This document shows positions 26,355-56,347 of a stretch of 64,000 bases of DNA, in pieces (position 1 is the stretch's first letter; every line of letters starts with the position of its first letter). The notes beneath the pieces are model-generated. The model did not search any database. It was not told where the DNA came from and saw only the letters and a program-made list of their open reading frames with translations. The position numbers and the translations under genes were made by a program. The stretch covers positions 62,001-126,000 of the IMG/VR virus record IMGVR_UViG_3300009184_000029; one strand, written 5' to 3'.

Positions 26355-26358
26355 TTTC

Positions 26359-27414
26359 TTATACTGTTTGAAGTTTATTTAGTTGTGACTCAATCATTTC
26401 AATTCTAATGTCGAAATAATTTTGGAAATTTTCAATTACTGAATTTTCAAATTTTTCTTTACTTGAGAATAACGATGATGTTTCTTCCATTGATTCATAG
26501 AGTTTTTCAGAAATATTATCTTCCAACCAATTTTGAATGAAGTCAGCAATAAAATCAACAATTTTATTTTGTTCTTGAATCCAAATACCATTATGTTCAT
26601 TCATCCAAGACGGAGCCATGTTTGGAATTTTACCAATAACTGGTACACCACACTTCATTGATTCCAATGGGAATGTTCCAAATGAACTAATTGGGTCAAT
26701 CCACACACTCAAAAAACATTCTTGGAATGTTTCAGCAAATTGTTCTTCAGTCAAACCTCTCATATCTCTAAATGCGAACCATCTAAACTGAGGGTATTTT
26801 AAGTAAAAAGACTTAATTACATTCATTGAATCTCTTTGTTCTCTTGAATGAATTGCGATAATTGGTTTTGGTGGAATTGATTGTTTAACAAATCTTTCTG
26901 AGATGTAAGGTTCAATTACATCAGTCGGGGTATTTTTCATCATCCCTGAAACATAATTTTTTAATGATTCTGAGGTTGTAATACATTTATTAACATTCAA
27001 CTGAGACCAATTTGTACCAGGTTGTAATGTATCTAAAATGTAATCATAACATTGTGCCAATGAAATCTTGATACAAGGTAGATTAGAAATTTGTTGCATT
27101 ACGTACCCAAATAGTTCAGGAACAACAATCATATCTTCAGGTGACACCATCAATTGATTACCCTCAACAGATGAATGAGATAGTTCGTCCATATATTCGG
27201 AACCTAAACATTCTTTGACTCCAACATAGTCTGATTTTTCATGTAAAATCATTGAGTTAAATCCTGCTCTTTTTAAAGTTAGAGCCATTTGATAAATGAA
27301 TCTAACACTACCTGTTAAATTACCTTTTGTATCTTGTACAAAAAAATAAATTTTGGCAGATTTGTTTTTTAGATTTTCGATGGATACTTCTAATTTTTTA
27401 ATATTCTCGTCCAT
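26359..27414 (-). CDS. GT-B glycosyltransferase (GT4-like)
   Basis: SFGTFPLESMKCGVPVIG donor-binding motif. Confidence 0.75.
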   Translation of the reverse strand: MDENIKKLEVSIENLKNKSAKIYFFVQDTKGNLTGSVRFIYQMALTLKRAGFNSMILHEKSDYVGVKECLGSEYMDELSHSSVEGNQLMVSPEDMIVVPELFGYVMQQISNLPCIKISLAQCYDYILDTLQPGTNWSQLNVNKCITTSESLKNYVSGMMKNTPTDVIEPYISERFVKQSIPPKPIIAIHSREQRDSMNVIKSFYLKYPQFRWFAFRDMRGLTEEQFAETFQECFLSVWIDPISSFGTFPLESMKCGVPVIGKIPNMAPSWMNEHNGIWIQEQNKIVDFIADFIQNWLEDNISEKLYESMEETSSLFSSKEKFENSVIENFQNYFDIRIEMIESQLNKLQTV

Positions 27415-28319: not shown

Positions 28320-29034
28320 ATCTTTTTAATAATTCAGTAATAATCGGATTTCTAACAACATCTCCATCTCCAAATTCATGGACACCAACTTCAGACATGT
28401 TTCTTAATCTTTCTAAAACGTCCCATAATCCTGAGTGTTTTTTATCTTTATATCTGTCAGTTTGTTCTAAGTCACCGGAAATAAAGAATTTACTATCAGT
28501 CCCAATACGAGTTAAAAGAAGTTTCATTTGTTTTGGTGTGGCATTTTGTGCTTCTTCAAAAATTAATATTGAGTTGTCAATATTCATACCTCTCATATAT
28601 GCCAAGGCAAAAACCTCAATAACCTCTAACTGTTTTAATTTTTCTCTAGCCTCCTTACCTATAATTTTGTTTAATAAATAATAAGATGGAAAAATATAAG
28701 GGTCCAATTTCTCTTCCACATTACCTGGTAATGAACCTAATTTCTCTTCAGCCTCGACCGCAGGTCGAACAATAATTATTTTCTCATATGGGGAATCATG
28801 TTCGGCCAATAAGTCAACTGCTGCCTTCATTGCAATAAAACTTTTACCAACACCCGCAGGTCCTGAACAAACAGTAATTTGGTTTCGTCTAAGTTTATCG
28901 TAATACTCCCTTTGACTTTGGGTTAAGAATTTATCCTTACCCTTTTTTATAATTCTACAAATTTGGTCTTTTTTTGAGACCTTAGTTTCTGACCCAAAAT
29001 CAATTGGGTCTTTAGTTGTTTTCTTTCTTGTCAT
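28303..29034 (-). CDS. phoH: PhoH-family ATPase
   Basis: GPAGVGKS, IIIVRPAVE, LGSLPG, LAYMRG, EEAQN, GDLEQTD, VVRNP. Confidence 0.95.
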   Translation of the reverse strand: MTRKKTTKDPIDFGSETKVSKKDQICRIIKKGKDKFLTQSQREYYDKLRRNQITVCSGPAGVGKSFIAMKAAVDLLAEHDSPYEKIIIVRPAVEAEEKLGSLPGNVEEKLDPYIFPSYYLLNKIIGKEAREKLKQLEVIEVFALAYMRGMNIDNSILIFEEAQNATPKQMKLLLTRIGTDSKFFISGDLEQTDRYKDKKHSGLWDVLERLRNMSEVGVHEFGDGDVVRNPIITELLKRYEDRD

Positions 29035-30008
29035 TATTTAATTGTATAATAATCCATCCAGTAGTCAATCATTTCATCTAACATTGACTCAAATGTATAG
29101 TCATGTAACCAACCTGTTTTAATTTTTAATTTTGAACAGTCTCCTTTTAAATCGTGTAATTCTTCAGGTCTTAAAAATTTTTCATCTTGTTTAACATATT
29201 CAGACCAATTTAGACTTAATCTTGTAAAAACATAATTGACAAGTTCTTTCACTGAATGAGATATTCCTGTTGAACAAACAAAATCATCGGGTTCATCTAA
29301 TTGTAATATTTCCCACATTGCCTTAACATAATCTTTAGCGTGTCCCCAGTCACGAGTAGCGTCAAGATTACCCAATTTAAGTTCATTGGATAGTCCTAAT
29401 TTAATCTTAACCGCTTCTTTACATACTTTATTAGTTACAAAGTTTGTTCCCCTTCTTGGGGATTCATGATTAAATAAAATCCCATTTGAAATAAACATTC
29501 CGTAAGAATTTCTATAATTACGACAAATGTTATAACTGAATACCTTAGCACACCCGTATGGGGACACAGGATTCATTGGAGTAGTTTCTCTTTGATATCC
29601 ATCTGAGTCAATTGAATTACCAAACATTTCTGAAGAAGATGCTTGATATATTTTTGTGTCAGGCTTAATTAATTTAACCGCCTCTAAAAGATTTAAAGTT
29701 CCTAATCCTGTTACATTTGTTGTGTAAATTGGTTGGTCAAATGAAATTCTAACATGTGATTGAGCAGCTAAATTATATATCTCATCTGGCATTATTTTCT
29801 GAACTACTGATATTAGTGAAGACATGTCAGTTAAGTCCGCATAGTGAAGTTTTATCTTAGTATAAACATTATCCAATCTTGATGTTTGGTTTTCGGCAAC
29901 TGAATTTCTTTTTAAAGTTCCGTGAACTTCATACCCTTTTTCTAATAAAAATTCACTCAAATATGACCCATCTTGGCCATTTATTCCTGTTATTAATGCT
30001 TTTTTCAT
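29034..30008 (-). CDS. gmd: GDP-mannose 4,6-dehydratase
   Basis: ALITGINGQDGSYL, YNLAAQSHV..SF, YQASSSEMFG, SPYGCAK, GILFNHESPRRG.NFVT, RDWGHAKDYV. Confidence 0.96.
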   Translation of the reverse strand: MKKALITGINGQDGSYLSEFLLEKGYEVHGTLKRNSVAENQTSRLDNVYTKIKLHYADLTDMSSLISVVQKIMPDEIYNLAAQSHVRISFDQPIYTTNVTGLGTLNLLEAVKLIKPDTKIYQASSSEMFGNSIDSDGYQRETTPMNPVSPYGCAKVFSYNICRNYRNSYGMFISNGILFNHESPRRGTNFVTNKVCKEAVKIKLGLSNELKLGNLDATRDWGHAKDYVKAMWEILQLDEPDDFVCSTGISHSVKELVNYVFTRLSLNWSEYVKQDEKFLRPEELHDLKGDCSKLKIKTGWLHDYTFESMLDEMIDYWMDYYTIK

Positions 30009-30874
30009 TGTTTAATATAATCTCTATAGTTTTCAATATTATTTAAAAGATACGATGGGTAAGTGTCGTCAATTGACACCTTTAAAAGTTTACCTCGAAA
30101 AAACGGGTCATTTTCCTCAACAATATTATTTTCAACACTTGATAATATATAAGGATTATTAAATTCTTGATGGGAATATGCATCAATTTTTGTTTTAACT
30201 CTTTCAGGACCTCCCATAAAACTAAAATGCCAACCACCACTCTCAACAATATTAGTCGTGTGTTTATTTTGTCTAATTAGATTAATCGATTTATTTTTTA
30301 AATTGCCGTAAGACAAACATTTAGTACCACTCCAATTATATTCTTTTAATAAATTAAAGTAATAATAATATGTGGTTTGTTTAAAATCGAAAATTGAATT
30401 TAAAATTGAATTTTTTAGTTTTAAAATTTCGTCAGGATTTGGTATTTCATCTAAATCTGATATTAATACTATATCGTCATCAGAACATCCAATCATACCA
30501 TAAAACATGGATTCTCTTTGGTAAGTTTCTCTACCCCATTGTTTTTCATGCCTTCCCCATCCTTCAGATGATTCTACATATTTTAAAATTCTGTTTTTAA
30601 CATTATCCACATCACTTAATGGATTTGATACATATGGTAAATTAATAAAATCATCAGGAGTGTCATTAACAATCACATGAATTATTTTATCTTCAAATTT
30701 TTTAAATTTGTCTTTATTTTCATTAAAAAATAATGGTTTTTCCTTACCTGAAAAAGTTACCGTAGATTCAACTATTACAAATTTATCAACAATATCATTA
30801 AGTATTTCTAATCTTAATTCCAATATATCTAATTCGTTAAAAAATAAAAAACAGTCGTATATTTTATTCATCAT
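30005..30874 (-). CDS. glycosyltransferase family 17-like (MGAT3-type)
   Basis: IYDCFLFFNELDILELRL, ISDLDEIP, GWHFSF. Confidence 0.88.
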   Translation of the reverse strand: MMNKIYDCFLFFNELDILELRLEILNDIVDKFVIVESTVTFSGKEKPLFFNENKDKFKKFEDKIIHVIVNDTPDDFINLPYVSNPLSDVDNVKNRILKYVESSEGWGRHEKQWGRETYQRESMFYGMIGCSDDDIVLISDLDEIPNPDEILKLKNSILNSIFDFKQTTYYYYFNLLKEYNWSGTKCLSYGNLKNKSINLIRQNKHTTNIVESGGWHFSFMGGPERVKTKIDAYSHQEFNNPYILSSVENNIVEENDPFFRGKLLKVSIDDTYPSYLLNNIENYRDYIKQ

Positions 30875-31782
30875 ATTAAATTTTTAGATTTATAATATTC
30901 TAATGCTTGGTTTTTACAGGTTTGATAATCAAACAATTGACCATCCCTATCCATATATGTAAATCCTCGAGTATACACATCACCAGTTGCCCAATAACCA
31001 TCACTAACATTATGTCTTGACCAATATTTTGGAGCAATCACTTTGTTTACATTTTGATTTAACCAAGCCGGCCACCAACCAAATGTTGAGTTAGAAATTA
31101 TTAACCATTTTGCTTTATAGATTAAATAAAAATCAAATCCTATTTCATCATGTATTGTAGGAATATCAAATGGCATATACATTCTTGCACAATTTGGGTC
31201 ATCAGTTACCACTAAAAATTTCATATTGGGGTTAATTGAGACCATATGGTTTATTGAGTCCCTCCAATATTCTCTTCTTAATATAACATTTGGTATATTT
31301 TGATATTCACCACCTCTAAAATTTAAAATACATAAATTATCATCAAGAACAATTGATAAATCATTTAATTTTTTTTCGTATTTATTTATATATTCTCGTT
31401 TAATTTTAAACCAATTCAGTATATCAGGTTTTTTTTCAATTAAGTAATCTTCACATTGATAAATTCCGCCTAATGCCCCATTATCTCCAATTAATTTAGT
31501 ATTATCACTAATCCCATAAACTCTTGGGTCAAACATTGTTATGTTTACATTATCATAGTGATGATATGTAATCCATCTTTCATGAAATTCGGTAAAGTCT
31601 CCAGTGACTTCTTTACCGAAATCAACATCCATAAAATACATTTGATTCATCCCGCCATAATAATCGTGACTTGGGGTTGGATTAATTCCCCACTCAAATC
31701 CTAATTTTTCGGCAACCGCTCTACAAACAGAATATTGCCACATATGGTTTCCAAAATTACCAGTTAAATTTGTAGTTATCAT
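30871..31782 (-). CDS. glycosyltransferase family 11 (alpha-1,2-fucosyltransferase-like)
   Basis: GNFGNHMWQY, NFRGGEY, IISNSTFGWWPAWL. Confidence 0.88.
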   Translation of the reverse strand: MITTNLTGNFGNHMWQYSVCRAVAEKLGFEWGINPTPSHDYYGGMNQMYFMDVDFGKEVTGDFTEFHERWITYHHYDNVNITMFDPRVYGISDNTKLIGDNGALGGIYQCEDYLIEKKPDILNWFKIKREYINKYEKKLNDLSIVLDDNLCILNFRGGEYQNIPNVILRREYWRDSINHMVSINPNMKFLVVTDDPNCARMYMPFDIPTIHDEIGFDFYLIYKAKWLIISNSTFGWWPAWLNQNVNKVIAPKYWSRHNVSDGYWATGDVYTRGFTYMDRDGQLFDYQTCKNQALEYYKSKNLI

Positions 31783-31783
31783 T

Positions 31784-32491
31784 CTAAATATTTCTATATT
31801 GTTCCTTAATTGTAAAATTATTACTGAACAAAGTAAACATTGCTCTCTCTAAAAGATATGCTTCTCCTGGTTGAACATGCCAAGACACATAATGTCTCAT
31901 AGTCTCATAAAAATGTTTATTATATTTTAGAATGTCTTTTTTTGGTATGATGTGGTTTCCACCAGGGGCGAACCTAATATATTCTCCAAATACAGGATTT
32001 TCAAATATACTGAGTAACATTTCTCGATAATTAAAAATATATTTACATTTATGAATTCTTGCAACAGTCGCATCAACCTCAATAGGTTTTTCATGATATG
32101 CGTCAGTCTCATCTACAAATGAATATATATTAGGACTGTGTCTCGGGTGGTCCCTTATATAGTTTTCAATTGTTGTAAATTCAGTGTTATTTATAATATT
32201 TTTAAATTTTTCAAATCCACAATGTCTGGGGATGACATTTCCTTTACAAAAAATAATTACTTCAGGTAAATTTTCATAATTTGTTACAATGAAATCAAAT
32301 ATGTCATAAATGTTTGCCCCGACATTAATTTGGTGTTTTATTTTTTCTGACGGTGTAAATCGGTGAGCTCTATCGTAAATTAAATAATTGTCAGTGTACT
32401 CCTCCACCCAAGATTGACTTAAATCTTCAGGTAAAAAATTAAAATCTGTAACTACTAAAAACGCTCCTGATGTTATAATTTTATTAGACAT
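31784..32491 (-). CDS. DUF3431-like protein
   Basis: NVGANIYD..DFIV.NY.NLP...IF; start moved to ATG 32491, just after the upstream stop. Confidence 0.65.
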   Translation of the reverse strand: MSNKIITSGAFLVVTDFNFLPEDLSQSWVEEYTDNYLIYDRAHRFTPSEKIKHQINVGANIYDIFDFIVTNYENLPEVIIFCKGNVIPRHCGFEKFKNIINNTEFTTIENYIRDHPRHSPNIYSFVDETDAYHEKPIEVDATVARIHKCKYIFNYREMLLSIFENPVFGEYIRFAPGGNHIIPKKDILKYNKHFYETMRHYVSWHVQPGEAYLLERAMFTLFSNNFTIKEQYRNI

Positions 32492-32492
32492 G

Positions 32493-33380
32493 TTATGAAA
32501 AATATTTAAAATTTGTTTTATCAAATTTTGTATATAGACCAAAACAGGTCATTTGTCCCCACAATGGAAGATGTACATCATCTGCAATACCGAAAAATAA
32601 TGAACTCAATGCAAAATTACTTCTTGATAATATTACAGTTTCTGAATTACATAAAAGAAATAAATCATAACATGGGTCATCATTTGAAATATATCGATAT
32701 GGTAATTCAGGAATATATTCACCTGGATTAGTTACAATAATGACTTCGTGATTTGGTTTATTTATTAATACCTCTTCAATAACTTTTTTTATTTTAATTG
32801 GGGGCAAAGGGGATTGATTATTAAATTCAGGATGAGTTTGTCTAAATTTAACATCGAATTCAACATCTGGGATTAAACCACTTTCAATATGATTTTTAAA
32901 ATGATTTGCACATACTGAACCATCGTAATCAGGTCGACCTTTAACATCCTCAAGTCTAAGATGAATTAAAATTGTTTTTTTTGGGTCAAATGGAATTTCA
33001 TAATTCATTGATTTCCCATACTCCATAAATTTTTGTTTAAACTCTTCCGAGTAAACATTGTTTTTAAAATATGTAAAAAAATCTGTTTCTAAATTTAATA
33101 ATGTCTTTGACCATACAGTATAATGTGTTGGGGCTGCCAAATCAATCTCTTGAGTAAAATCCTCTGAAGTAAGTTTACTATTATGTAAATCAATAATGTC
33201 AAATAATATTTGTAAAAAAATAGTAGTATTGTATGATTGATTATATGAGTTATATATTCTTAAATGTGTCCTATGATATTTTACATATATGTCATTATTT
33301 ATTGAGTATAAAATTTGAGAAATAATGTCCCCAATATTTCCACCTAACCTATCGCTAGACCCAAATAAATCTGTAAACAT
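32493..33380 (-). CDS. divergent GT11/GT23-like glycosyltransferase
   Basis: DRLGGNI N-terminus, IHLRLED, DLFLL...VILSRSNF. Confidence 0.6.
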   Translation of the reverse strand: MFTDLFGSSDRLGGNIGDIISQILYSINNDIYVKYHRTHLRIYNSYNQSYNTTIFLQILFDIIDLHNSKLTSEDFTQEIDLAAPTHYTVWSKTLLNLETDFFTYFKNNVYSEEFKQKFMEYGKSMNYEIPFDPKKTILIHLRLEDVKGRPDYDGSVCANHFKNHIESGLIPDVEFDVKFRQTHPEFNNQSPLPPIKIKKVIEEVLINKPNHEVIIVTNPGEYIPELPYRYISNDDPCYDLFLLCNSETVILSRSNFALSSLFFGIADDVHLPLWGQMTCFGLYTKFDKTNFKYFS

Positions 33381-33382
33381 AG

Positions 33383-34006
33383 TTATATCTTTTTAAAAAT
33401 TGCGGTTAAAATGTTAGGAGTTAAATTTTTATCAACTCTAATATTATCTTCTAAATTACAATAATTTAACATACTATATCCTTGTCGATTCATAAACTTT
33501 TCAAGAGATTTTTCATTAAAATGAAAAATATGTTCATTAGGTTTTCGATGTTTCCAATTAGTAAACCATTCATCGTCCAATCCATTATGACACCATGGTA
33601 AACTAATAACAACATATGTGCATTTTAAATTTTTAACAAATTCAATATCGTGAAAATGTTCTAAACAATCAAAAAATGTGATAACCTCTACTTCTTTATC
33701 TAATATATTTTTAACAAATTCAATTCCGTCAGGTAATGGATATGCGGGTTCAATATCATTACCGTATAAATTGTTTATTAAATTTTTACAAGAGTCTAAA
33801 AAATACCCGTTACCATATCCAACATCCATTAATGAATTTGGTACTTTACCAATTGAACCAATTATATATCCTAGTCTAAGATTTTCTATATTTCTAGTCT
33901 GATTAAACATACCATATCTATCACCATATGATTTGTCATAAATAAATTGTTCTTTTATTATTTGTTCAATAACACCATCTTGTGTTAGTCTGTAATTTTC
34001 AATCAT
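33383..34006 (-). CDS. class I SAM-dependent methyltransferase
   Basis: LMDVGYGNGYF motif I; TFFDCLEHF. Confidence 0.88.
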   Translation of the reverse strand: MIENYRLTQDGVIEQIIKEQFIYDKSYGDRYGMFNQTRNIENLRLGYIIGSIGKVPNSLMDVGYGNGYFLDSCKNLINNLYGNDIEPAYPLPDGIEFVKNILDKEVEVITFFDCLEHFHDIEFVKNLKCTYVVISLPWCHNGLDDEWFTNWKHRKPNEHIFHFNEKSLEKFMNRQGYSMLNYCNLEDNIRVDKNLTPNILTAIFKKI

Positions 34007-34007
34007 T

Positions 34008-34763
34008 TTAAATCATTATATATTTTATGTTATCATACCAATAGTATGATTTATTTGTTATTCCCCATCCTTCAGGACATTTGTCATCAATTATTTTTTT
34101 AAAACACTCAATATCCAAGTCATTTTTGTAGTAATTTTTTATTGATGACGATAAAATTGAACTTCCAGACCAAACACACATGAATTTTTTACATGAAAAA
34201 ATTAAATCAACATAATGAAAAATATTTTTAGTGGTAATAAATTCAACAACTAAATCAGAAAAAAAATCATCAGGGACTACTAAATTAGGGTAGTCATTTG
34301 TTAAAATAACTAAAAATTTTTCATTTTTATATGTTAATAAATGAGATTTTATTTTTTCATTATCATACTCTTTAACTGATACACTGTTTAAATCTAAAAC
34401 TATATAATCATTAAATTCATTTATATTATTTGGTTGGTAATATATTTTAGCGTATTTACTTTCATTATTTACCCCATAAATTAATTCGATATTTTTATGT
34501 GTTGTAAATTCTTTATTAAAATCGACCGTGTCAGAAACCCCCCAGTTATCTAAATGTCCACAGTTTGCGTTTTCAGAGGTAATACCAATAACATGTGGAT
34601 TGGTGCCCCATACTAAATCATAAATTTCCTGACTTCTAAATAATGATTTATCACTTATGTAAAATTCATACCCTAAATTTGTAAATATTTCGGGTAATGT
34701 TGAGAAAGATAAATGGTCCCCAAGTCCTCCCCAATTAACATATAATATTTTTTTTTCCATCAC
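34008..34763 (-). CDS. putative GT-B glycosyltransferase (GT9-like GGLGD)
   Basis: N-terminal WGGLGDHL; context. Confidence 0.5.
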   Translation of the reverse strand: MMEKKILYVNWGGLGDHLSFSTLPEIFTNLGYEFYISDKSLFRSQEIYDLVWGTNPHVIGITSENANCGHLDNWGVSDTVDFNKEFTTHKNIELIYGVNNESKYAKIYYQPNNINEFNDYIVLDLNSVSVKEYDNEKIKSHLLTYKNEKFLVILTNDYPNLVVPDDFFSDLVVEFITTKNIFHYVDLIFSCKKFMCVWSGSSILSSSIKNYYKNDLDIECFKKIIDDKCPEGWGITNKSYYWYDNIKYIMI

Positions 34764-35527
34764 TCTTTTGGATATAAAAAATCTTTAGCAAATGTATCTT
34801 CAATTTCATTATAATTGTTTTCGTTAAAAGTTTCAATTGGTTTTTTTATATTTATATTATCAACACCTCCTCTTTCTCTTTTAATTAAAAATTCAGGATA
34901 AGTTCTTATATAATAATGGTTTAGTTGGGCGATTTCATCGTTTGCAAAATAATTAAATGGCCCCGACCCTTGATTAAAATGAGTATCCATCCATAAATTA
35001 CCGCACCAATGAATGTGATGTTCAGTATGTGGGACTAATTTACAAATACTTTTAAACTGAGAATGTAATGTTTTTTTTCTTTTGGTAAATCGTTTAAGTT
35101 GACTTGTATAAGTTTCATCAAATGTATTTAATCCATTATCCCCAAACATTGCCCAATTTATTACTAAACAATTACAATTATCATAATTATTTATAAAATC
35201 TTGAACATTTTTATGTTTTTTTAATACTAAAAATTCGTCAATATCGAAAAACGCAGCCCATTCATATTCTTCGTAGTAATTTTCAGCAAATTCAGCAAAA
35301 CATTTAGATTGTATATTTCTTACCCATAACGGTTCATCACTCATGTAAGAAAAACCATCATATTCATGTAAATGAACATTTTTGTGTGAAGTATTATTTT
35401 CCCATCTCCAATTATTTTGAAATATGTGTATATCGTCAAATCCTAATTTAACATTATAATCAATCCATTCTTGAATATATAGTTCATCTTTATGTGCTAA
35501 AGTAACTAACGCAATTTTTTTTTTCAT
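34760..35527 (-). CDS. GT-A glycosyltransferase (GT92/GT2-like)
   Basis: EELYIQEWI-like start, FFDIDEFL, INWAMFG, FKSI, LNHYY. Confidence 0.85.
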   Translation of the reverse strand: MKKKIALVTLAHKDELYIQEWIDYNVKLGFDDIHIFQNNWRWENNTSHKNVHLHEYDGFSYMSDEPLWVRNIQSKCFAEFAENYYEEYEWAAFFDIDEFLVLKKHKNVQDFINNYDNCNCLVINWAMFGDNGLNTFDETYTSQLKRFTKRKKTLHSQFKSICKLVPHTEHHIHWCGNLWMDTHFNQGSGPFNYFANDEIAQLNHYYIRTYPEFLIKRERGGVDNINIKKPIETFNENNYNEIEDTFAKDFLYPKE

Positions 35528-35530
35528 TTT

Positions 35531-36190
35531 TTAAAATTTTGGATAACTTGAATTTGTCCCCATGTAGTTATGAAACGCGAATGGTTTAATTCCTTGTATT
35601 TCAGGTATCATACTTTCGTGTGAAAAATATTTTGCAATGTCTATGTCTGCAAACTTACATCCCTGTTCGATATATTTATGTCTGTAATGAGCACAAATAA
35701 AACCATCCTCATTTGTGTATCCATAAAATGATTTCCATTCTAAGTTAATATTGTTTGCAACATCAAGTAATTTTTTACTTCTTAATGAAACACTATTACC
35801 TTGTCTAATAATGTTCCCATGAATATCTCGATATGATATATCGTCAGTAGGTAGTGGAAATGGGGCACCAATATAATCGTAGTCTAAAAAATCATCTCTC
35901 CATGATTGGGGATTAACTATAAAACCATTATCATGAATTAAAATCGCATAATCAGTATCAACATGTTTCGGTAAATTATAAATTATATTATAATTCCACT
36001 CATCAATATTTGAACTTTTTTCTGTAAATTCATGTTTGATATATGTTGGTAAATTTTCAGGTTTAATATCTGAAGCAATTTTAACATCTCCAAATTTAAT
36101 ATTTCTACAACTATACTCTAAAGCTTGAATTGTTTGAGGTATTCTTACACTTGTTAGCGCAATTAAAGTTATATTACTTAGATTAATCAT
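35531..36190 (-). CDS. DUF5672-like putative glycosyltransferase
   Basis: ILIHDNGF...W.D.FL.YDYIGAP, GN..SLRSKKLL, NEDGF, FS.E, FAFH. Confidence 0.75.
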   Translation of the reverse strand: MINLSNITLIALTSVRIPQTIQALEYSCRNIKFGDVKIASDIKPENLPTYIKHEFTEKSSNIDEWNYNIIYNLPKHVDTDYAILIHDNGFIVNPQSWRDDFLDYDYIGAPFPLPTDDISYRDIHGNIIRQGNSVSLRSKKLLDVANNINLEWKSFYGYTNEDGFICAHYRHKYIEQGCKFADIDIAKYFSHESMIPEIQGIKPFAFHNYMGTNSSYPKF

Positions 36191-36197
36191 AATTTTA

Positions 36198-36830
36198 TTA
36201 TATTTGATTTACTCTTTCTAAAACAGTTAATCCATTATTATTTGTATAATGTTCTTTGATTACCCAATTTTTATTTCTATCTAAAAAATCCATCATTGCG
36301 GTATACAAACCTCTTTTAATAACTTTTTCGTTTGAAATTTTAGGAGAAATTTGACCGTTTTGATAAAAATCTTCATCAGTATAACCAAAAGTTACGGTAT
36401 CATGTAAAATTATCCATTTTTTAACTTTTATTTCATGCTTATCCAACTCTTTGCTTAATTGGTTATATGTGTGTAAAGTATCAATAAATAATAAATCAGT
36501 TTCATCTATCTCAATAGAAAGTACATCTCCTAAAATAAATTCAAAATCACAATTACAATTTTTTGCAAATTCATTTGTCTCATTTTCATATGGTTTGAAA
36601 AAATGATAATTTAAATCTATTGATTTAACTTTTTTTGGTTTTCCAAGTATTAAGGCTAAAGTTGAAATTGCAAATCTAGTGCCCATTTCTGTAACTACTT
36701 CACATTTTGAGGAATACTCTTTTAATGTTGGTAGATGTTCATTAATATCAACCATACCTCTACCGTATAATATATGGTTAGGAAATTGTAACTTACAAAT
36801 TTTGTCAAAATGAATTTCTGGTGTCTCCAT
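36198..36830 (-). CDS. class I SAM methyltransferase (Methyltransf_24-like)
   Basis: INEHLPTL, EMGTR, DLLFIDTLHTY, ILHDT, NNNGLTVL. Confidence 0.85.
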   Translation of the reverse strand: METPEIHFDKICKLQFPNHILYGRGMVDINEHLPTLKEYSSKCEVVTEMGTRFAISTLALILGKPKKVKSIDLNYHFFKPYENETNEFAKNCNCDFEFILGDVLSIEIDETDLLFIDTLHTYNQLSKELDKHEIKVKKWIILHDTVTFGYTDEDFYQNGQISPKISNEKVIKRGLYTAMMDFLDRNKNWVIKEHYTNNNGLTVLERVNQI

Positions 36831-36835
36831 TGTTT

Positions 36836-37540
36836 TTATGAATTATATTTTTTATTTACTATATTTAAATCTTTTATTTTTCTGTCTTCTTTAATTGTTG
36901 TGGTTAATTGGTCAGAACTTGTTCTATTTACGACTGTAATTGATTCAGAAATCAACGGCTCACCGTAAAGTAAATAAAGTTTCTGATAAAAATCACAATC
37001 CATTAACCAAATTAAATTTTCATCAAATAATGGAATATTTTTATTTTTCACAGTAAGTCCGCTGGGACCACCTAAAGAGTTATTACCTGACCAAACTGAT
37101 TCATTCCATCTTGGGGTATATAAATTATATAAATTTACCCCATCTTTTGTATGATAAAATTTTGTAAAAAACCAAAATATATTTTTATTTTGCATTATAA
37201 AATTATATTGATTTTCTAATGAAGAATAGTCATACAAAAAATCATCCTGAAACAAAATTTTAATCCATTCACCTGAACAATTTGCAATTGCGTTATTAAT
37301 ATTTGGAGAATGTGAATTAAAACTATGTTCGTTATTTTTTACATATTTAATATGTAATTTTTTTGACCACAATTCACAAAATTTTTGAATTTCATTATTT
37401 TTGCTATCATCAGATATCACCACTTCAAAGTTTTTAAAAGTTTGCTCATTAAGTAATTCAAAATTTTTATTTAAATACTCAATTCCTTTATCATTAAACT
37501 CATATGTTGGTATTGCAATTGAAAAGAAAAAAACACTCAT
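36836..37540 (-). CDS. glycosyltransferase family 2
   Basis: SIAIPTYE, EVVISDDS, KILFQDDF. Confidence 0.88.
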   Translation of the reverse strand: MSVFFFSIAIPTYEFNDKGIEYLNKNFELLNEQTFKNFEVVISDDSKNNEIQKFCELWSKKLHIKYVKNNEHSFNSHSPNINNAIANCSGEWIKILFQDDFLYDYSSLENQYNFIMQNKNIFWFFTKFYHTKDGVNLYNLYTPRWNESVWSGNNSLGGPSGLTVKNKNIPLFDENLIWLMDCDFYQKLYLLYGEPLISESITVVNRTSSDQLTTTIKEDRKIKDLNIVNKKYNS

Positions 37541-37546
37541 ATTAAA

Positions 37547-38233
37547 TTATAATATTTTTTTTAATTTTTGTAAACCCATTGTAGTATCTGAGGGTACATT
37601 TAATGGTTTAAGAATTGGTACAACAATTGAAGTTTTTATTGCCAAATCGTAAATTGATTTTGATTCCGTACCCACATTATAAACTCCATTTTCATTTTTT
37701 AAAATTAATCTAATGACAAGTGATGAAATAATGTCAACATAATCACAATTTGTTTTAATGTCTGTCCAAGCTTTATCGTATGGGAATGGATTTGGTTTAT
37801 GTGATAATCTACAAATTAAATAATTATTACATTTTAATTGGACATGCCCGTCAGATAAAAGTTTTGTATAACCATACCATGTATTTAAATGTGATGGTAC
37901 ATCTTCTTCTGACGCATTCGGCACTGAATTAGCGTAAATATAATCAGTAGATATTTGAATTAATTTTTTATTAGTCTTATTACAATATTCGACTAACTCA
38001 TCAACAAATTTATAATTTATTAACCAATTAGAATTTTTATCATCGGAATAAGTTTTAGTAAATGCAATACAATTTAAAATTACACTATAATTTTCCATAT
38101 ATGGAATTAATGTTTCAAAATTTAAAACATCAATATTATTTTTTTTCCTTGAAATAAAATCCCAATTAGTTTGTCTGTAAATTTCAGACCCAAGTAACCC
38201 GTCTCCTAAAATTAATACTTTTAATTTATCCAT
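37547..38233 (-). CDS. RmlD-like NDP-4-keto-6-deoxysugar reductase (SDR)
   Basis: ILGDGLLGS, ISTDYIY, YGYTK (YxxxK). Confidence 0.85.
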   Translation of the reverse strand: MDKLKVLILGDGLLGSEIYRQTNWDFISRKKNNIDVLNFETLIPYMENYSVILNCIAFTKTYSDDKNSNWLINYKFVDELVEYCNKTNKKLIQISTDYIYANSVPNASEEDVPSHLNTWYGYTKLLSDGHVQLKCNNYLICRLSHKPNPFPYDKAWTDIKTNCDYVDIISSLVIRLILKNENGVYNVGTESKSIYDLAIKTSIVVPILKPLNVPSDTTMGLQKLKKIL

Positions 38234-39525
38234 TTTTGTTTAAATATATTTTCTACATATTCAAAAATATCTTCGTCATAATGAGGTGCAGCCCCTAAGA
38301 AAAAAACTCTATCCAAGACCATATTTGAATTTGGGTATTTATTAAAATCATCTAAATGAAAGTATCCCGGATGATATAAAATGTTGCCTGCAAAATAATT
38401 TCTAGTTTGTATTTTATTATCCTCAAGAAATTTAACTAAGGTGTCTTTTAATTCTTTATTTTCACAAATAAAAGGTGTTCCAAACCAGCATGTTTCAGAT
38501 TTAGTTAAAGAATTAACTCCTTTTACTCCTGTAACATATTTTACAATAATGTCCTGAATTCTTCTTTTACTATTTTTTCTTTTTGAATCTATTTCCTCAA
38601 ATTTTGATAACTGTACTAATCCAATTGACCCTTGTAAATCCATTGGCTTTAAATTATAACCCATGTTAGTAAAGACATATTTATGGTCAATAATTCCATT
38701 ATATGACTCTAACCAATTATCGAATCTATTTTTACAAGTACCACAAGACAACAAATTTGCAGAACCAACACAATAACAATCTCTTCCCCACCATGAGATA
38801 CTAACAAATAGTTTTTTTAAATCTTCAATATTAGTACAAATCATCCCACCTTCCCCTGTTGAAATGTGGTGAGCGGGATAAAAAGAACATGACCATGCAA
38901 TATAATAATCTGATATTGGTTTATTATCCCATTTTGTGCCTAATGTATCACAACTATCCCCTACTAATTTTAAATTATATTTTTCACATAATTCTTTTAA
39001 AAAATCCATATCAGGAGGATTCCCTAATACAGGAGAAACAAATATTGCTTTAGTTTTATCCGTAATCTTCTCTTCAATCTTTGTTACATCAAAATTTAAA
39101 GTTTCCCACTCAATATCAATAAAAACAGGTTTTAATCCATTTTGGACTATAGGAGCAATTGTTGTTGGAAATCCTACAGGAGAAACAATAATTTCATCCC
39201 CATCTTCCCATTTAAAAAACTTTTTAAGTGCGGTGATTAATACCAAATTTGCGGAACTACCTGAGTTCACCATATGAGAATACTTTACTCCAAATATTTT
39301 TGAAAACATATTTTCAAACTTGTGAACATTTTCACCTGCAACAATCCATTTTCCTGAAATTAAAGTGTTAATCGCTGAAAGTATTTCTTCATGGTCCCAA
39401 TAAGGTCCTGAATATAAAACTTGGCTTTTTCCTGGCACAAATTTTTGATTGTATAGATACTTAGGATTATTTAATATGATGTAATCCTTAATATCGTTTA
39501 ATAAATCTTCTATTTTTTTTGACAT
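38221..39525 (-). CDS. rfbH: RfbH/DdhC-type (E1) NDP-4-keto-6-deoxyhexose 3-dehydratase
   Basis: VNSGSSANL, SFYPAHHISTGEGG (His replaces the aminotransferase Lys), C-x57-C-x-C cluster ligands, YNLKP, LFAGN-like YFAGN. Confidence 0.88.
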   Translation of the reverse strand: MSKKIEDLLNDIKDYIILNNPKYLYNQKFVPGKSQVLYSGPYWDHEEILSAINTLISGKWIVAGENVHKFENMFSKIFGVKYSHMVNSGSSANLVLITALKKFFKWEDGDEIIVSPVGFPTTIAPIVQNGLKPVFIDIEWETLNFDVTKIEEKITDKTKAIFVSPVLGNPPDMDFLKELCEKYNLKLVGDSCDTLGTKWDNKPISDYYIAWSCSFYPAHHISTGEGGMICTNIEDLKKLFVSISWWGRDCYCVGSANLLSCGTCKNRFDNWLESYNGIIDHKYVFTNMGYNLKPMDLQGSIGLVQLSKFEEIDSKRKNSKRRIQDIIVKYVTGVKGVNSLTKSETCWFGTPFICENKELKDTLVKFLEDNKIQTRNYFAGNILYHPGYFHLDDFNKYPNSNMVLDRVFFLGAAPHYDEDIFEYVENIFKQKWIN

Positions 39526-39548
39526 ATTAAAATATATGTAATTCGTAG

Positions 39549-40313
39549 TTAATTATCAATAGAGACCCATTCATTTGGAATTATGTCTTGAGTATCTTTT
39601 GGTCCGGTTGGTCCAAACCATTTTTTTGGTGTAATTATTTTACCATTATTATCATTAAGATATGACCCCCACCAACTGAATGAACTATTAGATATTATAA
39701 CATTTTTACACATAGTAATTAATGTAAAATCTAAAATTTCATCATCAAAATCTGAGTATAAAAAATTATCAGATTTAAAGTTTAATTTAACCCAATCCAT
39801 ATCATCTGACACAAATATAAATTTTGTGTCATTGATTAACTCAATTGCCTTTTGGTAATAATTTAAATCACAGGTAAAATGAAAATCTTTAAATTTTAAA
39901 TAATCACCTCTTCTTATATGAACACAAGTTAAATTTTTAATATCATATTTACTTGATATTACTTTAATATTTTTATCACTAATAAAAAATAATTTTTTAA
40001 TATCATTTATATTATTTTTAAAATATTTTTCACTTTGGAAATACCCATTTAACAATAAATTTTTTTCATAAGGTATATTAGAAAACGAAAACTTTGGTTC
40101 ATTATATTTTTTTTCAAATTCATAGTTATTGTGATTTGGAATATTTTTAAAAATATTATCTATATATTTGATAGATTGATTACCTTGATTTGGTGTGTAA
40201 CATTGATGAAAATTAAATGAATAGGTATCATCATTAGACAATGCTAATGACACTGTTGCTGCAATTTGGAACATTTGATTACCAAGACCTCCCTGTAAAT
40301 TACAACTTATCAT
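39549..40313 (-). CDS. glycosyltransferase family 11
   Basis: GGLGNQMFQ, GYFQSEKYF, VHIRRGDY, ISNSSFSWWG. Confidence 0.95.
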   Translation of the reverse strand: MISCNLQGGLGNQMFQIAATVSLALSNDDTYSFNFHQCYTPNQGNQSIKYIDNIFKNIPNHNNYEFEKKYNEPKFSFSNIPYEKNLLLNGYFQSEKYFKNNINDIKKLFFISDKNIKVISSKYDIKNLTCVHIRRGDYLKFKDFHFTCDLNYYQKAIELINDTKFIFVSDDMDWVKLNFKSDNFLYSDFDDEILDFTLITMCKNVIISNSSFSWWGSYLNDNNGKIITPKKWFGPTGPKDTQDIIPNEWVSIDN

Positions 40314-41016
40314 ATGGTTTTTTATTTCTTATTTTGGTGGCGTGGTCATTGACCATATCCATATTTACTTTATGCTCGTTGATAGGATTATTTTCGTTAT
40401 ATATATAATTTATTTCACTCATAAAACGATAATGTTCCTCACCTGACATTTCTAACATCGGAAACATAAAACACAGGTCCCCACTCCATTGCCAGTAATT
40501 ACCATTTTCATCTCTTAAATCTTCTTCTTTGATTTTTCTCCACAAAAAGGTTCTCCAAGTTCGAATATGAGATGCGGTAAATCTACTTTTTCGTAAATTT
40601 GAAAAATTTGTTTGAGGTTGTGAAAATCCTGGTGTTCCATTTGAGTATTTAAAACTTCCATTTGCAATCCAAATGTTTTCATCTTCATATAATTTATTAA
40701 TTCTTGTTAACACATTTGAGTCGGATAACCAATCATCCCCATCAACTTCAACAATTACTTCATTGTCTGATATATTTTCATTATATCTAATTATTTTATC
40801 AAAATTACCCGCTTGATATAATTTTTTATCATTATCGTCGACTAAAATAAATCTATTATCATCTTTAATTAAATCTTTAACTATCGATACTGATTTATCA
40901 GTTGATAAATCATGAGTAATGTAACATTTAAAATCTTTAAACCTTTGTCCCATAATAGACAATATTGATTTTTCAATGTAATTTTCCGCATTATAAAAAC
41001 CTGTTAAAACTACCAT
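40300..41016 (-). CDS. glycosyltransferase family 2
   Basis: EVDGDDWL, HIRTWR, DLCFMFPMLEM. Confidence 0.85.
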   Translation of the reverse strand: MVVLTGFYNAENYIEKSILSIMGQRFKDFKCYITHDLSTDKSVSIVKDLIKDDNRFILVDDNDKKLYQAGNFDKIIRYNENISDNEVIVEVDGDDWLSDSNVLTRINKLYEDENIWIANGSFKYSNGTPGFSQPQTNFSNLRKSRFTASHIRTWRTFLWRKIKEEDLRDENGNYWQWSGDLCFMFPMLEMSGEEHYRFMSEINYIYNENNPINEHKVNMDMVNDHATKIRNKKPYDKL

Positions 41017-41017
41017 A

Positions 41018-41698
41018 TTATTTAATATATTTTTTTAAAATTTTATCATTATACCCCTCTCTGTTGATTTGTAAAAAATCTATACTTTGATTAATTAAAA
41101 TATCATTTTCTGTATCCCAATTTAAATTTAATAAATGTGTTTCTTCTTTTATTTTCGGATTTTTATGTAGTAAACCATATATTTTATTTGATAACTCCAT
41201 GACACTTATTTTCTCAACTCCTGATAAAAATAATAAACTATTATTTGTTTTATCAATACAATATAGAACAATATTTACCAAATCTTCAATATCAATCAGA
41301 GAACGATAAACATTTTTATAAATTAATATTTCATTTTCATTTTTAACAGATTCTTTTAAAAAATTAACAATATTATTTTTATTTCCGTTAAATCCAACTA
41401 TTTGAGGAATTCTAAATATTATATAATTTTTACAATTGTTTTTGATAATTTCCTCGACTTGTAATTTATGTCTATAGTAATCATTATCAATTATTCCTGT
41501 TAATACGCTGCTAAAATAAATTAATTTTAAATTTTGATTGTTATTAATTAAATTAATTAATAATTTTTTTTCTCGTTCAAAATTATTGATGTTTGTTTCT
41601 TTAGAGTTAGATACACCTGAAGCAAAAATTAAAAAATTCTCTAATGACTCGGAAAATTTTTTAAACTCTGAGGATAATAAACCTGAGCCAACAATCAT
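41018..41698 (-). CDS. short NAD-dependent epimerase/dehydratase-like protein
   Basis: MIVGSGLLS, IFASGVSNS, YFSS, YYRHK (YxxxK). Confidence 0.78.
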   Translation of the reverse strand: MIVGSGLLSSEFKKFSESLENFLIFASGVSNSKETNINNFEREKKLLINLINNNQNLKLIYFSSVLTGIIDNDYYRHKLQVEEIIKNNCKNYIIFRIPQIVGFNGNKNNIVNFLKESVKNENEILIYKNVYRSLIDIEDLVNIVLYCIDKTNNSLLFLSGVEKISVMELSNKIYGLLHKNPKIKEETHLLNLNWDTENDILINQSIDFLQINREGYNDKILKKYIK

Positions 41699-56343: not shown

Positions 56344-56347
56344 TTTT

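What the first reader, a model, noticed from the sequence alone, without database searches (positions are those of the whole stretch)
29034..41698. Hybrid 3,6-dideoxyhexose route: Gmd plus Fe-S E1 (RfbH) plus RmlD-like reductase, with GT11 enzymes
Seen: gmd; an E1-type enzyme with SFYPAHH (His for Lys) and C-x57-C-x-C followed by further Cys at +9 and +12; two SDR reductase/epimerase-like genes; three GT11-like genes. No fcl, rfbF/rfbG or E3 reductase was recognised in the window. Known: E1 normally acts on CDP-4-keto-6-deoxyglucose with E3; GDP-colitose is normally made by Gmd, ColD (no Fe-S) and ColC; GT11 includes the colitosyltransferase WbgN. Inference: a non-canonical GDP-linked dideoxy-sugar pathway, or dependence on host CDP-sugar enzymes.
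Basis: partly seen in the sequence, partly recalled or inferred. Interest (0 to 1): 0.62.

Follow-up and report, generated by a model that had tools for sequence, protein, structure and literature searches.

The report
Phage sugar island with Fe-S 3-dehydrase
A large T4-like phage carries a gene island for building a complex sugar coat; its iron-sulfur sugar-deoxygenating enzyme belongs to an uncharacterised branch that is linked to dTDP-sugar genes, not to the neighbouring GDP-mannose dehydratase or to the classical CDP pathway.

Summary
All the genes listed are there, all on the minus strand, in a T4-like myovirus record of 222.8 kb (about 28% GC, 76% complete). No fcl, rfbF, rfbG or E3 was found in the held 222.8-kb (76%) record.

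The proposed Gmd-to-E1 hybrid route is not the best reading. The E1-like enzyme (434 aa) keeps the catalytic His and all four [2Fe-2S] cysteines. It belongs to a third deep clade, about 35% identical to both Salmonella RfbH (CDP) and a Streptomyces SpnQ-like enzyme (dTDP).

In 80 related viral loci and 48 bacterial loci, E1 forms a fixed pair with a reductase, and in at least 8 loci that reductase is fused to the next GT2. Of the viral loci, 61 of 80 have the pair with no Gmd or Fcl nearby.

Where a nucleotide-specific gene sits beside the pair, it is of the Rml (dTDP) type. Examples are the operons RmlB-RmlA-SDR-E1 and RmlA-E1-SDR-RmlB, an RmlB-like gene or true RmlC in close phage relatives, and the RmlD fold of the partner. 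This phage also encodes RmlA and an RmlC-family protein outside the window.

Best reading: two separate branches. Gmd feeds fucosyltransferase-like GTs. E1 plus reductase plus GT2 makes and transfers a 3,6-dideoxyhexose, probably dTDP-linked, with host-supplied electrons. The nucleotide remains unproven.

The parts
38221..39525 (-). E1-like PMP/[2Fe-2S] NDP-4-keto-6-deoxyhexose 3-dehydrase (434 aa), member of a third deep clade of the E1/SpnQ family
   Evidence: PF01041 E = 6.5e-70. NF011936 RfbH gives 360 bits (cut-off 423). Yersinia E1 3BCX E = 2e-79. H219/H220 and C192, C250, C252, C264 are invariant in 112 homologues. It is 34.7% identical to Salmonella RfbH and 35.4% to a Streptomyces SpnQ-like enzyme. 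All 67 viral sequences in the tree form one clade.
37547..38233 (-). Short RmlD-fold SDR (228 aa), the fixed partner of E1; inferred 4-ketoreductase
   Evidence: PF04321 E = 2e-17. It carries GDGLLG and YGYTK. It lies immediately downstream of E1 in 36 of about 80 viral loci. The AF2 model has pLDDT 94 and its top PDB folds are all RmlD, TM 0.79-0.83.
36836..37540 (-). GT2 glycosyltransferase, probable transferase for the E1/SDR product
   Evidence: PF00535 E = 1e-12. It is fused in frame to the SDR in at least 8 related loci, where residues 1-228 match the SDR and 232-460 match this GT2.
29034..30008 (-). GDP-mannose 4,6-dehydratase (Gmd)
   Evidence: TIGR01472 gives 397.6 bits, full length. 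PF16363 E = 3e-117. It is 47-53% identical to cyanophage and mycobacterial Gmd.
39549..40313 (-). GT11 (alpha-1,2-fucosyltransferase family) glycosyltransferase
   Evidence: PF01531 E = 4.9e-31; HIRRGD motif.
30871..31782 (-). GT11-like glycosyltransferase (divergent)
   Evidence: PF01531 E = 5.6e-9. It is 26% identical to the GT11 at 39549-40313.
32493..33380 (-). Probable third GT11-like protein (weak evidence)
   Evidence: No Pfam hit. It has an HLRLED motif. Its Atlas feature neighbours are viral clusters, one of which carries PF01531 in 20% of members.
41018..41698 (-). Second short SDR (226 aa) of unassigned specificity
   Evidence: GSGLLS and YYRHK motifs. Weak PF04321 match. The AF2 model has pLDDT 88 and resembles generic extended SDRs. 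It is conserved between GT2_5 and GT2 in 10 viral loci.
30005..30874 (-). GT17-like glycosyltransferase
   Evidence: PF04724 E = 2e-31.
31784..32542 (-). DUF3431 protein
   Evidence: PF11913 E = 9e-6.
33383..34006 (-). SAM methyltransferase
   Evidence: PF13489 E = 3e-13.
34760..35527 (-). GT2_4/GT92-like glycosyltransferase
   Evidence: PF13704 and PF01697.
35531..36190 (-). DUF5672 protein, conserved downstream of the E1 module
   Evidence: PF18922 E = 6e-10. Present in 41 related loci.
40300..41016 (-). GT2 glycosyltransferase
   Evidence: PF00535 E = 1.4e-13.
41695..43557 (-). 620-aa GT2_5-family glycosyltransferase, upstream end of the island
   Evidence: PF13712 E = 7.5e-24.
25554..27414 (-). 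Two further glycosyltransferases (GT2, GT1-like) beyond PhoH, part of the same island
   Evidence: PF00535 and PF00534.
55099..61256 (+). Second glycosyltransferase cluster (PF11397 GlcNAc-T, GT10 fucosyltransferase-like, GT7C-like, HtrL_YibB)

Best explanation
The region is the core of a phage glycan-building island: about a dozen soluble glycosyltransferases, a methyltransferase and nucleotide-sugar enzymes, in an uncultivated T4-like myovirus. It holds two separate nucleotide-sugar branches, not one hybrid route.

Branch 1. Gmd makes GDP-4-keto-6-deoxymannose. This most likely feeds a GDP-fucose-type donor for the GT11 and GT10 fucosyltransferase-like enzymes. The epimerase/reductase step would come from the host or from an unassigned phage SDR.

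Branch 2 is a conserved three-gene module.
- The E1-like PMP/[2Fe-2S] enzyme removes the 3-hydroxyl of an NDP-4-keto-6-deoxyhexose.
- The adjacent short RmlD-fold SDR reduces C4 to give an NDP-3,6-dideoxyhexose.
- The next gene, a GT2, transfers that sugar.

The nucleotide is most likely dTDP. dTDP-glucose would come from the phage's own RmlA, and the 4,6-dehydration from a host RmlB. Electrons would come from general host ferredoxin or flavodoxin reductases, as for SpnQ, because no E3 exists.

What is shown: gene identities, the conserved catalytic and cluster residues, the fixed E1-reductase pairing, the reductase-GT2 fusion, the absence of CDP-pathway genes, and the Rml-type neighbours.

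What is inferred: the chemistry of each step, the dTDP nucleotide, the electron source, and the acceptor (a cell-surface glycan or virion proteins).
For: The host record is a phage: Gp23, Gp20, TerL and PhoH.

E1 features: the catalytic His and four Cys are invariant.

Fixed E1-SDR pair:
- An SDR lies immediately downstream of E1 in about 68 of 80 viral loci.
- An SDR lies beside E1 in 28 of 48 bacterial loci.
- The SDR is fused to the GT2 in at least 8 loci.

Independence from Gmd:
- 61 of 80 viral loci have no Gmd or Fcl near the pair.
- Only 13 of 40 long viral contigs have Gmd.
- Gmd usually sits next to an Fcl-like gene.

No CDP route:
- 0 of 40 viral contigs have a true RfbG.
- No RfbF, RfbG or RfbI was found by tblastn in the genome or in any E1 locus.
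- The Nitrospirales chromosome G064 has E1 plus SDR but no RfbF or RfbG.

dTDP context in bacteria, all above NCBIfam cut-offs and with no RmlD nearby:
- L118: RmlB>RmlA>SDR>E1.
- L116: RmlA>E1>SDR>RmlB.
- L117 and L138: RmlB<RmlA<|SDR>E1.
- L124: SDR>E1>RmlC>RmlB.
- Overall, RmlA or RmlB lies within 8 kb in 10 of 48 loci, against Gmd in 2 of 48 and RfbF/RfbG in 0 of 48.

dTDP context in phages:
- L010 (E1 82% identical, same gene order) has an RmlB-like gene (TIGR01181 304 bits) in the slot of the short SDR.
- L051 has a true RmlC between E1 and the short SDR, and a true RmlB on the same contig.
- The cultured cyanophage clusters have true RmlB and RmlC.
- RmlB-like genes occur in 8 of 40 and RmlC-family genes in 5 of 40 viral contigs.
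- This phage has RmlA and an RmlC-family gene.

Partner fold: the short SDR models as RmlD.

Tree: the sister of the viral E1 clade is a Chitinophagales locus with RmlA-like>E1>SDR.

Precedent: SpnQ is an Fe-S 3-dehydrase on a dTDP sugar without a dedicated E3 (review PMC8987622).
Against: - No enzyme assay exists, so nucleotide specificity rests on gene context only.
- The held genome has no RmlB, so a host enzyme must be assumed. RmlA lies about 94 kb from E1 and could serve another purpose.
- Gmd (with Fcl-like) does sit next to E1-SDR in several viral loci (L025-27, L042; L061/66/71/83 with a DUF3431 gene between), and this phage's Gmd has no recognisable Fcl partner.
- RmlC-type cupins and RmlD-fold reductases also exist for GDP- and CDP-sugars.
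- CDP- and dTDP-specific E1 homologues are 52% identical to each other, so specificity switches easily in this family.
- RfbF is present somewhere in 14 of 38 bacterial genomes that carry this clade.
- The virus record is only 76% complete.
Confidence: 0.5

Rival explanations
1. The phage Gmd product, GDP-4-keto-6-deoxymannose, is the substrate of the Fe-S E1-like enzyme. One of the short SDRs then reduces it to a GDP-3,6-dideoxyhexose (a colitose- or tyvelose-like sugar), which GT11-type enzymes transfer.
For: - Gmd is the only 4,6-dehydratase in the held genome, and it has no Fcl, Rmd or ColC partner.
- Gmd and Fcl-like (ColC is an Fcl homologue) lie directly beside E1-SDR in L025-27 and L042, and one DUF3431 gene away in L061/66/71/83.
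- Gmd is present in 13 of 40 E1-bearing viral contigs.
- A window-type Gmd lies 3-4 kb from E1 in two Nitrospirota loci.
Against: - 61 of 80 viral loci, and the near-complete genomes G017 and G028, have E1-SDR without Gmd.
- Where Gmd is adjacent it brings its own Fcl-like reductase, which already makes a complete fucose branch. The locus then holds two reductases for two pathways.
- The apparent Gmd next to E1 in L022 is really GalE-like.
- Bacterial operons place E1 between RmlA and RmlB.
- The partner has an RmlD fold.
- No Fe-S E1 acting on a GDP sugar is described.
Confidence: 0.2
2. Classical chemistry with borrowed parts. E1 acts on CDP-4-keto-6-deoxyglucose made by host RfbF and RfbG, with host E3 or another reductase. 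The phage SDR plays the role of CDP-paratose or CDP-abequose synthase.
For: - The best solved relative and the best NCBIfam model are the CDP-type E1/RfbH.
- The E1>SDR gene order mirrors Salmonella rfbH>CDP-paratose synthase.
- RfbF occurs in 14 of 38 and RfbG in 7 of 38 bacterial genomes with this clade.
Against: - No RfbF, RfbG or E3 lies within 8-10 kb of E1 in any of about 130 loci, nor in any of 40 viral contigs.
- The Nitrospirales chromosome G064 has E1 plus SDR but neither RfbF nor RfbG.
- The protein scores below the RfbH equivalog cut-off and is as far from Salmonella RfbH (34.7%) as from the dTDP-type enzyme (35.4%).
- The partner SDRs are at best 21-27% identical to CDP-paratose synthase.
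Confidence: 0.15
3. The E1-like protein does not deoxygenate in the phage setting. Without a dedicated reductase it acts as a 4-aminotransferase or has another role, as SpnQ does in vitro with PLP and glutamate.
For: - No E3, ferredoxin or flavodoxin is present in the held genome.
- SpnQ shows transaminase activity without a reductase (review PMC8987622).
Against: - The four cluster cysteines are invariant across 112 sequences, and Lys is replaced by His. Both argue for selection on the reductive Fe-S mechanism.
- The constant pairing with a ketoreductase fits a 4-keto product.
- General host reductases suffice for SpnQ.
Confidence: 0.05

Closest known systems
SpnQ (dTDP-4-keto-2,6-dideoxyglucose 3-dehydrase, spinosyn forosamine pathway) and actinomycete 'RfbH' homologues
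   Same: PMP-dependent, His in place of Lys, four-Cys [2Fe-2S]. No dedicated E3 gene. Sits among dTDP-sugar (Rml-type) genes.
   Different: Only about 35% identical. No 2,3-dehydratase or 3-ketoreductase lies nearby, so the substrate would be a 6-deoxy rather than a 2,6-dideoxy sugar. The setting is a glycan island of a phage, not an antibiotic cluster. The partner is a 4-ketoreductase, not an aminotransferase.
E1 / DdhC / AscC / RfbH (CDP-6-deoxy-L-threo-D-glycero-4-hexulose 3-dehydrase) with E3
   Same: Same fold, length (434 against 437 aa), catalytic His and cluster cysteines. The gene order E1>4-reductase matches rfbH>rfbS.
   Different: About 35% identical and below the RfbH equivalog cut-off. 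No rfbF, rfbG or E3 lies in the genome or near any clade member. There is a four-residue insertion with an extra Cys between C252 and the fourth ligand.
ColD/ColC colitose pathway (Gmd, ColD, ColC)
   Same: Gmd is present. The overall logic is the same: 4,6-dehydratase, then 3-dehydratase, then reductase. GT11 enzymes are present.
   Different: ColD has no Fe-S cluster, is about 390 aa and matches much more weakly (E = 3e-48 against 2e-79 for E1). No ColC/Fcl homologue is in this genome. E1 occurs mostly without Gmd.
LPS/glycan auxiliary gene clusters of T4-like cyanophages (P-SSM2, S-SCSM1, S-B05, S-B43, S-H68, RN05-S) and huge phages (LR756502)
   Same: Islands of gmd, SDRs, GT11, GT17, GT2 and methyltransferases in T4-like phages. 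S-B05-type phages and LR756502 carry E1 homologues (53% and 77% identical).
   Different: The cyanophage E1 belongs to another subclade, with Prochlorococcus. This phage is a distant T4 relative: its MCP is only 42-46% identical to huge-phage, Microcystis-phage and Flavobacterium-phage proteins.

Membership tests
E1/RfbH-type Fe-S 3-dehydrase (broad family including SpnQ) | DegT/aspartate-aminotransferase fold with His replacing the PLP lysine | tested here: met
   PF01041 E = 6.5e-70. SFYPAHH aligns with E1 His220. H219 and H220 are invariant in 112 sequences.
E1/RfbH-type Fe-S 3-dehydrase (broad family including SpnQ) | Four-cysteine [2Fe-2S] motif (C-x57-C-x-C-x7-C in Yersinia E1) | tested here: met
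   C192, C250, C252 and C264 align with the E1 ligands and are invariant. The last spacing is x11 because of a four-residue insertion. Cluster binding itself was not tested.
CDP-specific E1 (RfbH/DdhC/AscC equivalog) | Score above the curated equivalog cut-off | tested here: not met
   NF011936 gives 360.4 bits against a cut-off of 423. It is 34.7% identical to Salmonella RfbH.
CDP-specific E1 (RfbH/DdhC/AscC equivalog) | Genomic association with rfbF, rfbG and the E3 reductase | tested here: not met
   None in the held genome, 80 viral loci or 49 bacterial loci. True RfbG in 0 of 40 viral contigs.
CDP-specific E1 (RfbH/DdhC/AscC equivalog) | Activity on CDP-4-keto-6-deoxyglucose | not testable with these tools
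   Needs an enzyme assay.
SpnQ-type (dTDP-sugar Fe-S 3-dehydrase using general reductases) | No dedicated E3; dTDP-sugar gene neighbourhood | tested here: met
   No E3 anywhere. RmlA, RmlB and RmlC are adjacent in bacterial and phage relatives, and RmlA plus an RmlC-family gene are in this genome. In the window itself only the RmlD-fold partner is adjacent.
SpnQ-type (dTDP-sugar Fe-S 3-dehydrase using general reductases) | 2,6-dideoxy substrate supplied by a 2,3-dehydratase and 3-ketoreductase | tested here: not met
   No such genes were recognised among the window ORFs scanned against Pfam/NCBIfam or the neighbours sampled in related loci. The Streptomyces reference locus has them.
ColD (GDP-4-keto-6-deoxymannose 3-dehydratase) | No Fe-S cluster, about 390 aa, PLP/glutamate-recycled mechanism | tested here: not met
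   Four invariant cluster cysteines; 434 aa. The match to ColD is far weaker than to E1.
Gmd (GDP-mannose 4,6-dehydratase) | Full-length match to the Gmd equivalog with the SDR catalytic motif | tested here: met
   TIGR01472 gives 397.6 bits over 1-340 of 342, just below the cut-off of 415. Rival dehydratase models give about 100 bits. YGCAK is present. The same sub-cut-off type recurs in bacteria and phages.
RmlD (dTDP-4-dehydrorhamnose reductase) for the 228-aa SDR | RmlD fold with Rossmann motif and YxxxK | tested here: met
   AF2 model pLDDT 94. The top dozen PDB folds are RmlD, TM 0.79-0.83. GDGLLG and YGYTK are present.
RmlD (dTDP-4-dehydrorhamnose reductase) for the 228-aa SDR | Equivalog-level sequence score and full length (about 290 aa) | tested here: not met
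   TIGR01214 gives 49 bits against a cut-off of 224. It is 228 aa, a length conserved in 26 aligned homologues. It is RmlD-like, not RmlD.
GT11 fucosyltransferase family | Pfam PF01531 match with the HxRRxD motif | tested here: met
   Met for 39549-40313. Partial for 30871-31782. Inconclusive for 32493-33380.

The most novel reading that the evidence does not exclude
This clade is a third, uncharacterised type of Fe-S 3-dehydrase, found in hundreds of phage contigs and in at least nine bacterial phyla. It would define a new nucleotide-sugar pathway: dTDP-glucose to dTDP-4-keto-6-deoxyglucose to dTDP-4-keto-3,6-dideoxyglucose to a dTDP-3,6-dideoxyhexose, run on general cellular reductases. In these phages the module would be hard-wired to its own GT2 inside a membrane-free set of about a dozen glycosyltransferases. 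That set would decorate virion proteins rather than host LPS, much as giant viruses glycosylate their capsids.
Probability: 0.2. Interest if true: 0.75.

Novelty: new variant of a known kind. Interest (0 to 1): 0.5.

Why it matters
3,6-Dideoxyhexoses are strong antigenic determinants. They are known from only two activated forms: CDP (abequose, paratose, tyvelose, ascarylose) and GDP (colitose). A widespread dTDP-linked route run by a distinct E1 clade would add a new entry to the map of nucleotide-sugar biosynthesis. It would also show that automatic labels such as 'RfbH' or 'CDP-4-dehydro-6-deoxyglucose 3-dehydratase' on many phage and bacterial genes name the wrong substrate.

For phage biology, the conserved E1-reductase-GT2 module gives a concrete handle on what these large glycan islands make. 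The open question is whether they remodel the host surface during infection or glycosylate the virion. If the ordinary reading holds, this is one more phage glycan auxiliary cluster with an unassigned sugar.

Tried and rejected
- Megablast of the region against cultured phages found nothing.
- The idea that the genes just upstream of E1 (220-230 aa) were nucleotidyltransferases was rejected. They are DUF3431, a galactosyltransferase-like protein, or have no Pfam hit.
- My first loose BLAST labelling overcalled Gmd. The 'GMD' next to E1 in L022 is GalE-like. Those in L033 and L069 score only about 125 bits on the Gmd model.
- I first assumed L102 had RfbF and RfbG beside E1. Direct tblastn with Salmonella references found none in any E1 locus.
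- True RfbG genes found in five bacterial genomes lie on other contigs or 14-17 kb from E1, not beside it.
- Homology could not assign the nucleotide. The clade is equidistant from the CDP- and dTDP-type references, and those two are 52% identical to each other.
- Structure of the second short SDR gave only a generic extended-SDR fold, so its role stays open.
- The two primary papers on the E1 structure and on SpnQ are not held.
- Literature searches found no description of a dTDP- or GDP-linked Fe-S 3-dehydrase for 3,6-dideoxyhexoses, and none of this phage module.

Full report
**Setting.** The window is bases 62001-126000 of a 222.8-kb IMG/VR virus record, which CheckV rates 76% complete. 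GC is about 28%. It encodes a T4-type major capsid protein, portal, large terminase and PhoH, so it is a T4-like myovirus. Its capsid protein is only 42-46% identical to those of a huge phage, a Microcystis phage and Flavobacterium phages.

The finding lies in a run of tightly packed, often overlapping minus-strand genes.

**Check of the observation.** Every item was found. Full residue and score details are in the observation check.
- Gmd (29034-30008) matches the Gmd equivalog over its full length at 397.6 bits. It scores about 100 bits on the dTDP- and CDP-glucose dehydratase models.
- The 434-aa protein at 38221-39525 is E1-like. It contains SFYPAHH and cysteines at 192, 250, 252, 261 and 264. 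It aligns end to end with Yersinia E1 (3BCX, E = 2e-79) and far less well with ColD (E = 3e-48).
- In 112 aligned homologues, H219, H220, C192, C250, C252 and C264 never vary. C261 does vary.
- Two short SDRs carry Rossmann and YxxxK motifs.
- Two GT11 genes are clear and a third is only probable.
- No fcl, rfbF, rfbG, E3, ferredoxin, flavodoxin or rmlB was found in the held genome.
- Outside the window the genome does hold a bona fide RmlA and an RmlC-family gene.

**What the E1-like gene travels with.** IMG/VR holds 530 viral stretches that encode a relative. I examined the 80 best.
- In these, E1 is followed immediately by an SDR in about 68 cases. The SDR is either the short RmlD-like type seen here (36) or a roughly 272-aa extended SDR (32).
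- The two SDR types are only 22% identical to each other, so one has replaced the other in the same slot.
- In at least eight loci the short SDR is fused in frame to the GT2 that follows it in the window. This ties E1, reductase and GT2 into one functional module.
- By contrast, 61 of 80 loci have the pair with no Gmd or Fcl within 10 kb.
- Only 13 of 40 long contigs have Gmd anywhere.
- The near-complete genomes G017 (174 kb, terminal repeats) and G028 carry E1 plus reductase without Gmd.
- Where Gmd occurs it usually sits beside an Fcl-like gene, which is the normal two-gene fucose branch.

**Which nucleotide.** Homology does not decide it. The window protein is 34.7% identical to Salmonella RfbH (CDP) and 35.4% to a Streptomyces SpnQ-like enzyme (dTDP). 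Those two references are 52% identical to each other. This is therefore a third deep clade, and specificity switches easily in the family.

Gene context is more informative.

- *CDP.* True CDP-glucose dehydratase is absent from all 40 viral contigs. Salmonella RfbF, RfbG and RfbI find nothing in the genome or in any E1 locus. A single-chromosome Nitrospirales assembly (2.99 Mb) has E1 plus SDR but no RfbF or RfbG.
- *dTDP in bacteria.* In bacteria the E1-SDR pair sits in operons with RmlA and RmlB, all scoring above the NCBIfam equivalog cut-offs and with no RmlD nearby:
  - RmlB>RmlA>SDR>E1 in an Oligoflexales genome.
  - RmlA>E1>SDR>RmlB in a Verrucomicrobiota genome.
  - RmlB<RmlA divergent from SDR>E1 in Bacteriovoracales.
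  - SDR>E1>RmlC>RmlB in a MAG labelled Clavibacter.
  - Overall, RmlA or RmlB lies within 8 kb in 10 of 48 bacterial loci, Gmd in 2 and RfbF/RfbG in none.
- *dTDP in phages.*
  - The close relative L010 (E1 82% identical, same gene order) has an RmlB-like gene in the slot of the short SDR.
  - L051 has a true RmlC between E1 and the short SDR, and a true RmlB on the same contig.
  - G020 has RmlA, RmlB-like, RmlC, E1 and the short SDR.
  - The cultured cyanophages with an E1 homologue have true RmlB and RmlC in the cluster.
- *Partner fold.* The short SDR models with pLDDT 94 and its top dozen structural matches are RmlD.
- *Tree.* All 67 viral E1 sequences in the tree, the window's among them, form one clade. 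Its sister is a Chitinophagales locus with RmlA-like>E1>SDR.

**Mechanism proposed.** There are two branches.
- Gmd supplies a GDP-6-deoxyhexose, probably fucose, to the GT11 and GT10-type transferases. GT10 lies in a second cluster at 55099-61256.
- Separately, the E1-like enzyme deoxygenates C3 of an NDP-4-keto-6-deoxyhexose through the PMP/[2Fe-2S] mechanism. The short SDR reduces C4, and the GT2 transfers the 3,6-dideoxyhexose.
- The nucleotide is most likely dTDP, with dTDP-glucose from the phage RmlA and the dehydration from a host RmlB.
- Electrons would come from general host reductases, as documented for SpnQ (review PMC8987622).

None of the island's proteins has a membrane-spanning segment, and no flippase, polymerase or initiating transferase was recognised. 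The acceptor could therefore be a lipid-linked host intermediate at the cytoplasmic face or phage proteins. This remains open.

**Weak points.**
- There is no biochemistry.
- The held genome has no RmlB.
- RmlA is far from the island.
- Gmd here lacks a recognisable Fcl partner, and some viral loci do place Gmd and Fcl-like next to E1.
- RmlC- and RmlD-type folds also serve other nucleotides.

I put the dTDP reading near 0.5, the GDP hybrid near 0.2 and the CDP route near 0.15.

**Comparison and novelty.** According to a 2022 review, only three 3-dehydratases are characterised: E1 (CDP, Fe-S, E3), ColD (GDP, no Fe-S) and SpnQ (dTDP-2,6-dideoxy, Fe-S, general reductases). My searches found no description of this clade or module. 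Phage glycan and LPS islands with gmd and glycosyltransferases are well known.

The finding is best filed as a new variant of a known kind. It is a distinct, widespread E1-family clade in a fixed E1-reductase-GT2 module whose substrate is probably not the textbook one.

**Limits of the work.** As a result no reads were laid, and I have no data on environment or expression.

Noticed in passing
window 36836-38233; L007:11293-12672, L008, L015, L018, L020, L023, L024, L096: The short reductase and the following GT2 are separate genes here but form a single fused ORF of about 460 aa in at least eight related loci. This is a natural fusion linking sugar synthesis to its transferase.
   Followed up: yes
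window 14576-16378: The Gp23-type major capsid protein is 600 aa. It matches relatives in two pieces covering only about 55% of its length, which suggests a large insertion domain.
   Followed up: no
own genome 3864-9288 (L005), outside the window: A thymidylate-synthase-like protein with an insert (368 aa), RmlA, a GlnII-type glutamine synthetase and a YciA-like thioesterase lie together. This is an unusual set of auxiliary genes for a phage.
   Followed up: partly
own genome 47086-47586 (L150:7086-7586), outside the window: An RmlC-family cupin (PF00908 104 bits; below the RmlC equivalog cut-off) lies far from the glycan island. Relatives G005 and G007 have the same gene plus an RmlB-like gene.
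   Followed up: partly
window 55099-61256 (+ strand): A second glycosyltransferase cluster holds PF11397 GlcNAc-transferase, GT10 fucosyltransferase-like, GT7C-like and HtrL_YibB-like proteins. Several families are typical of eukaryotes and giant viruses.
   Followed up: partly
L096 (PLXT01000052.1) and L144 (BPGB01000006.1): Contigs binned into a Methanobacterium MAG and a Woesearchaeota MAG carry the phage-type E1-reductase-GT island (E1 75% and 62% identical). They are probably viral contigs mis-binned into archaeal genomes.
   Followed up: no
L006 (LR756502.1, 642-kb huge phage) and L031: There are two E1-like copies in one phage locus. The huge phage's copy is 77% identical to the window's.
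   Followed up: no
L102, L103, L105, L108, L110, L112, L137 (Bacteroidia, Fibrobacteria): A bacterial subclade has E1 followed by conserved proteins of about 578 aa and 650 aa instead of an SDR. This is reminiscent of branched-chain (yersiniose-type) sugar pathways. It was not annotated.
   Followed up: no
window 22475-24433: A 652-aa ORF at the edge of the island is the only protein nearby with weak membrane-like segments. It has no informative family match.
   Followed up: no
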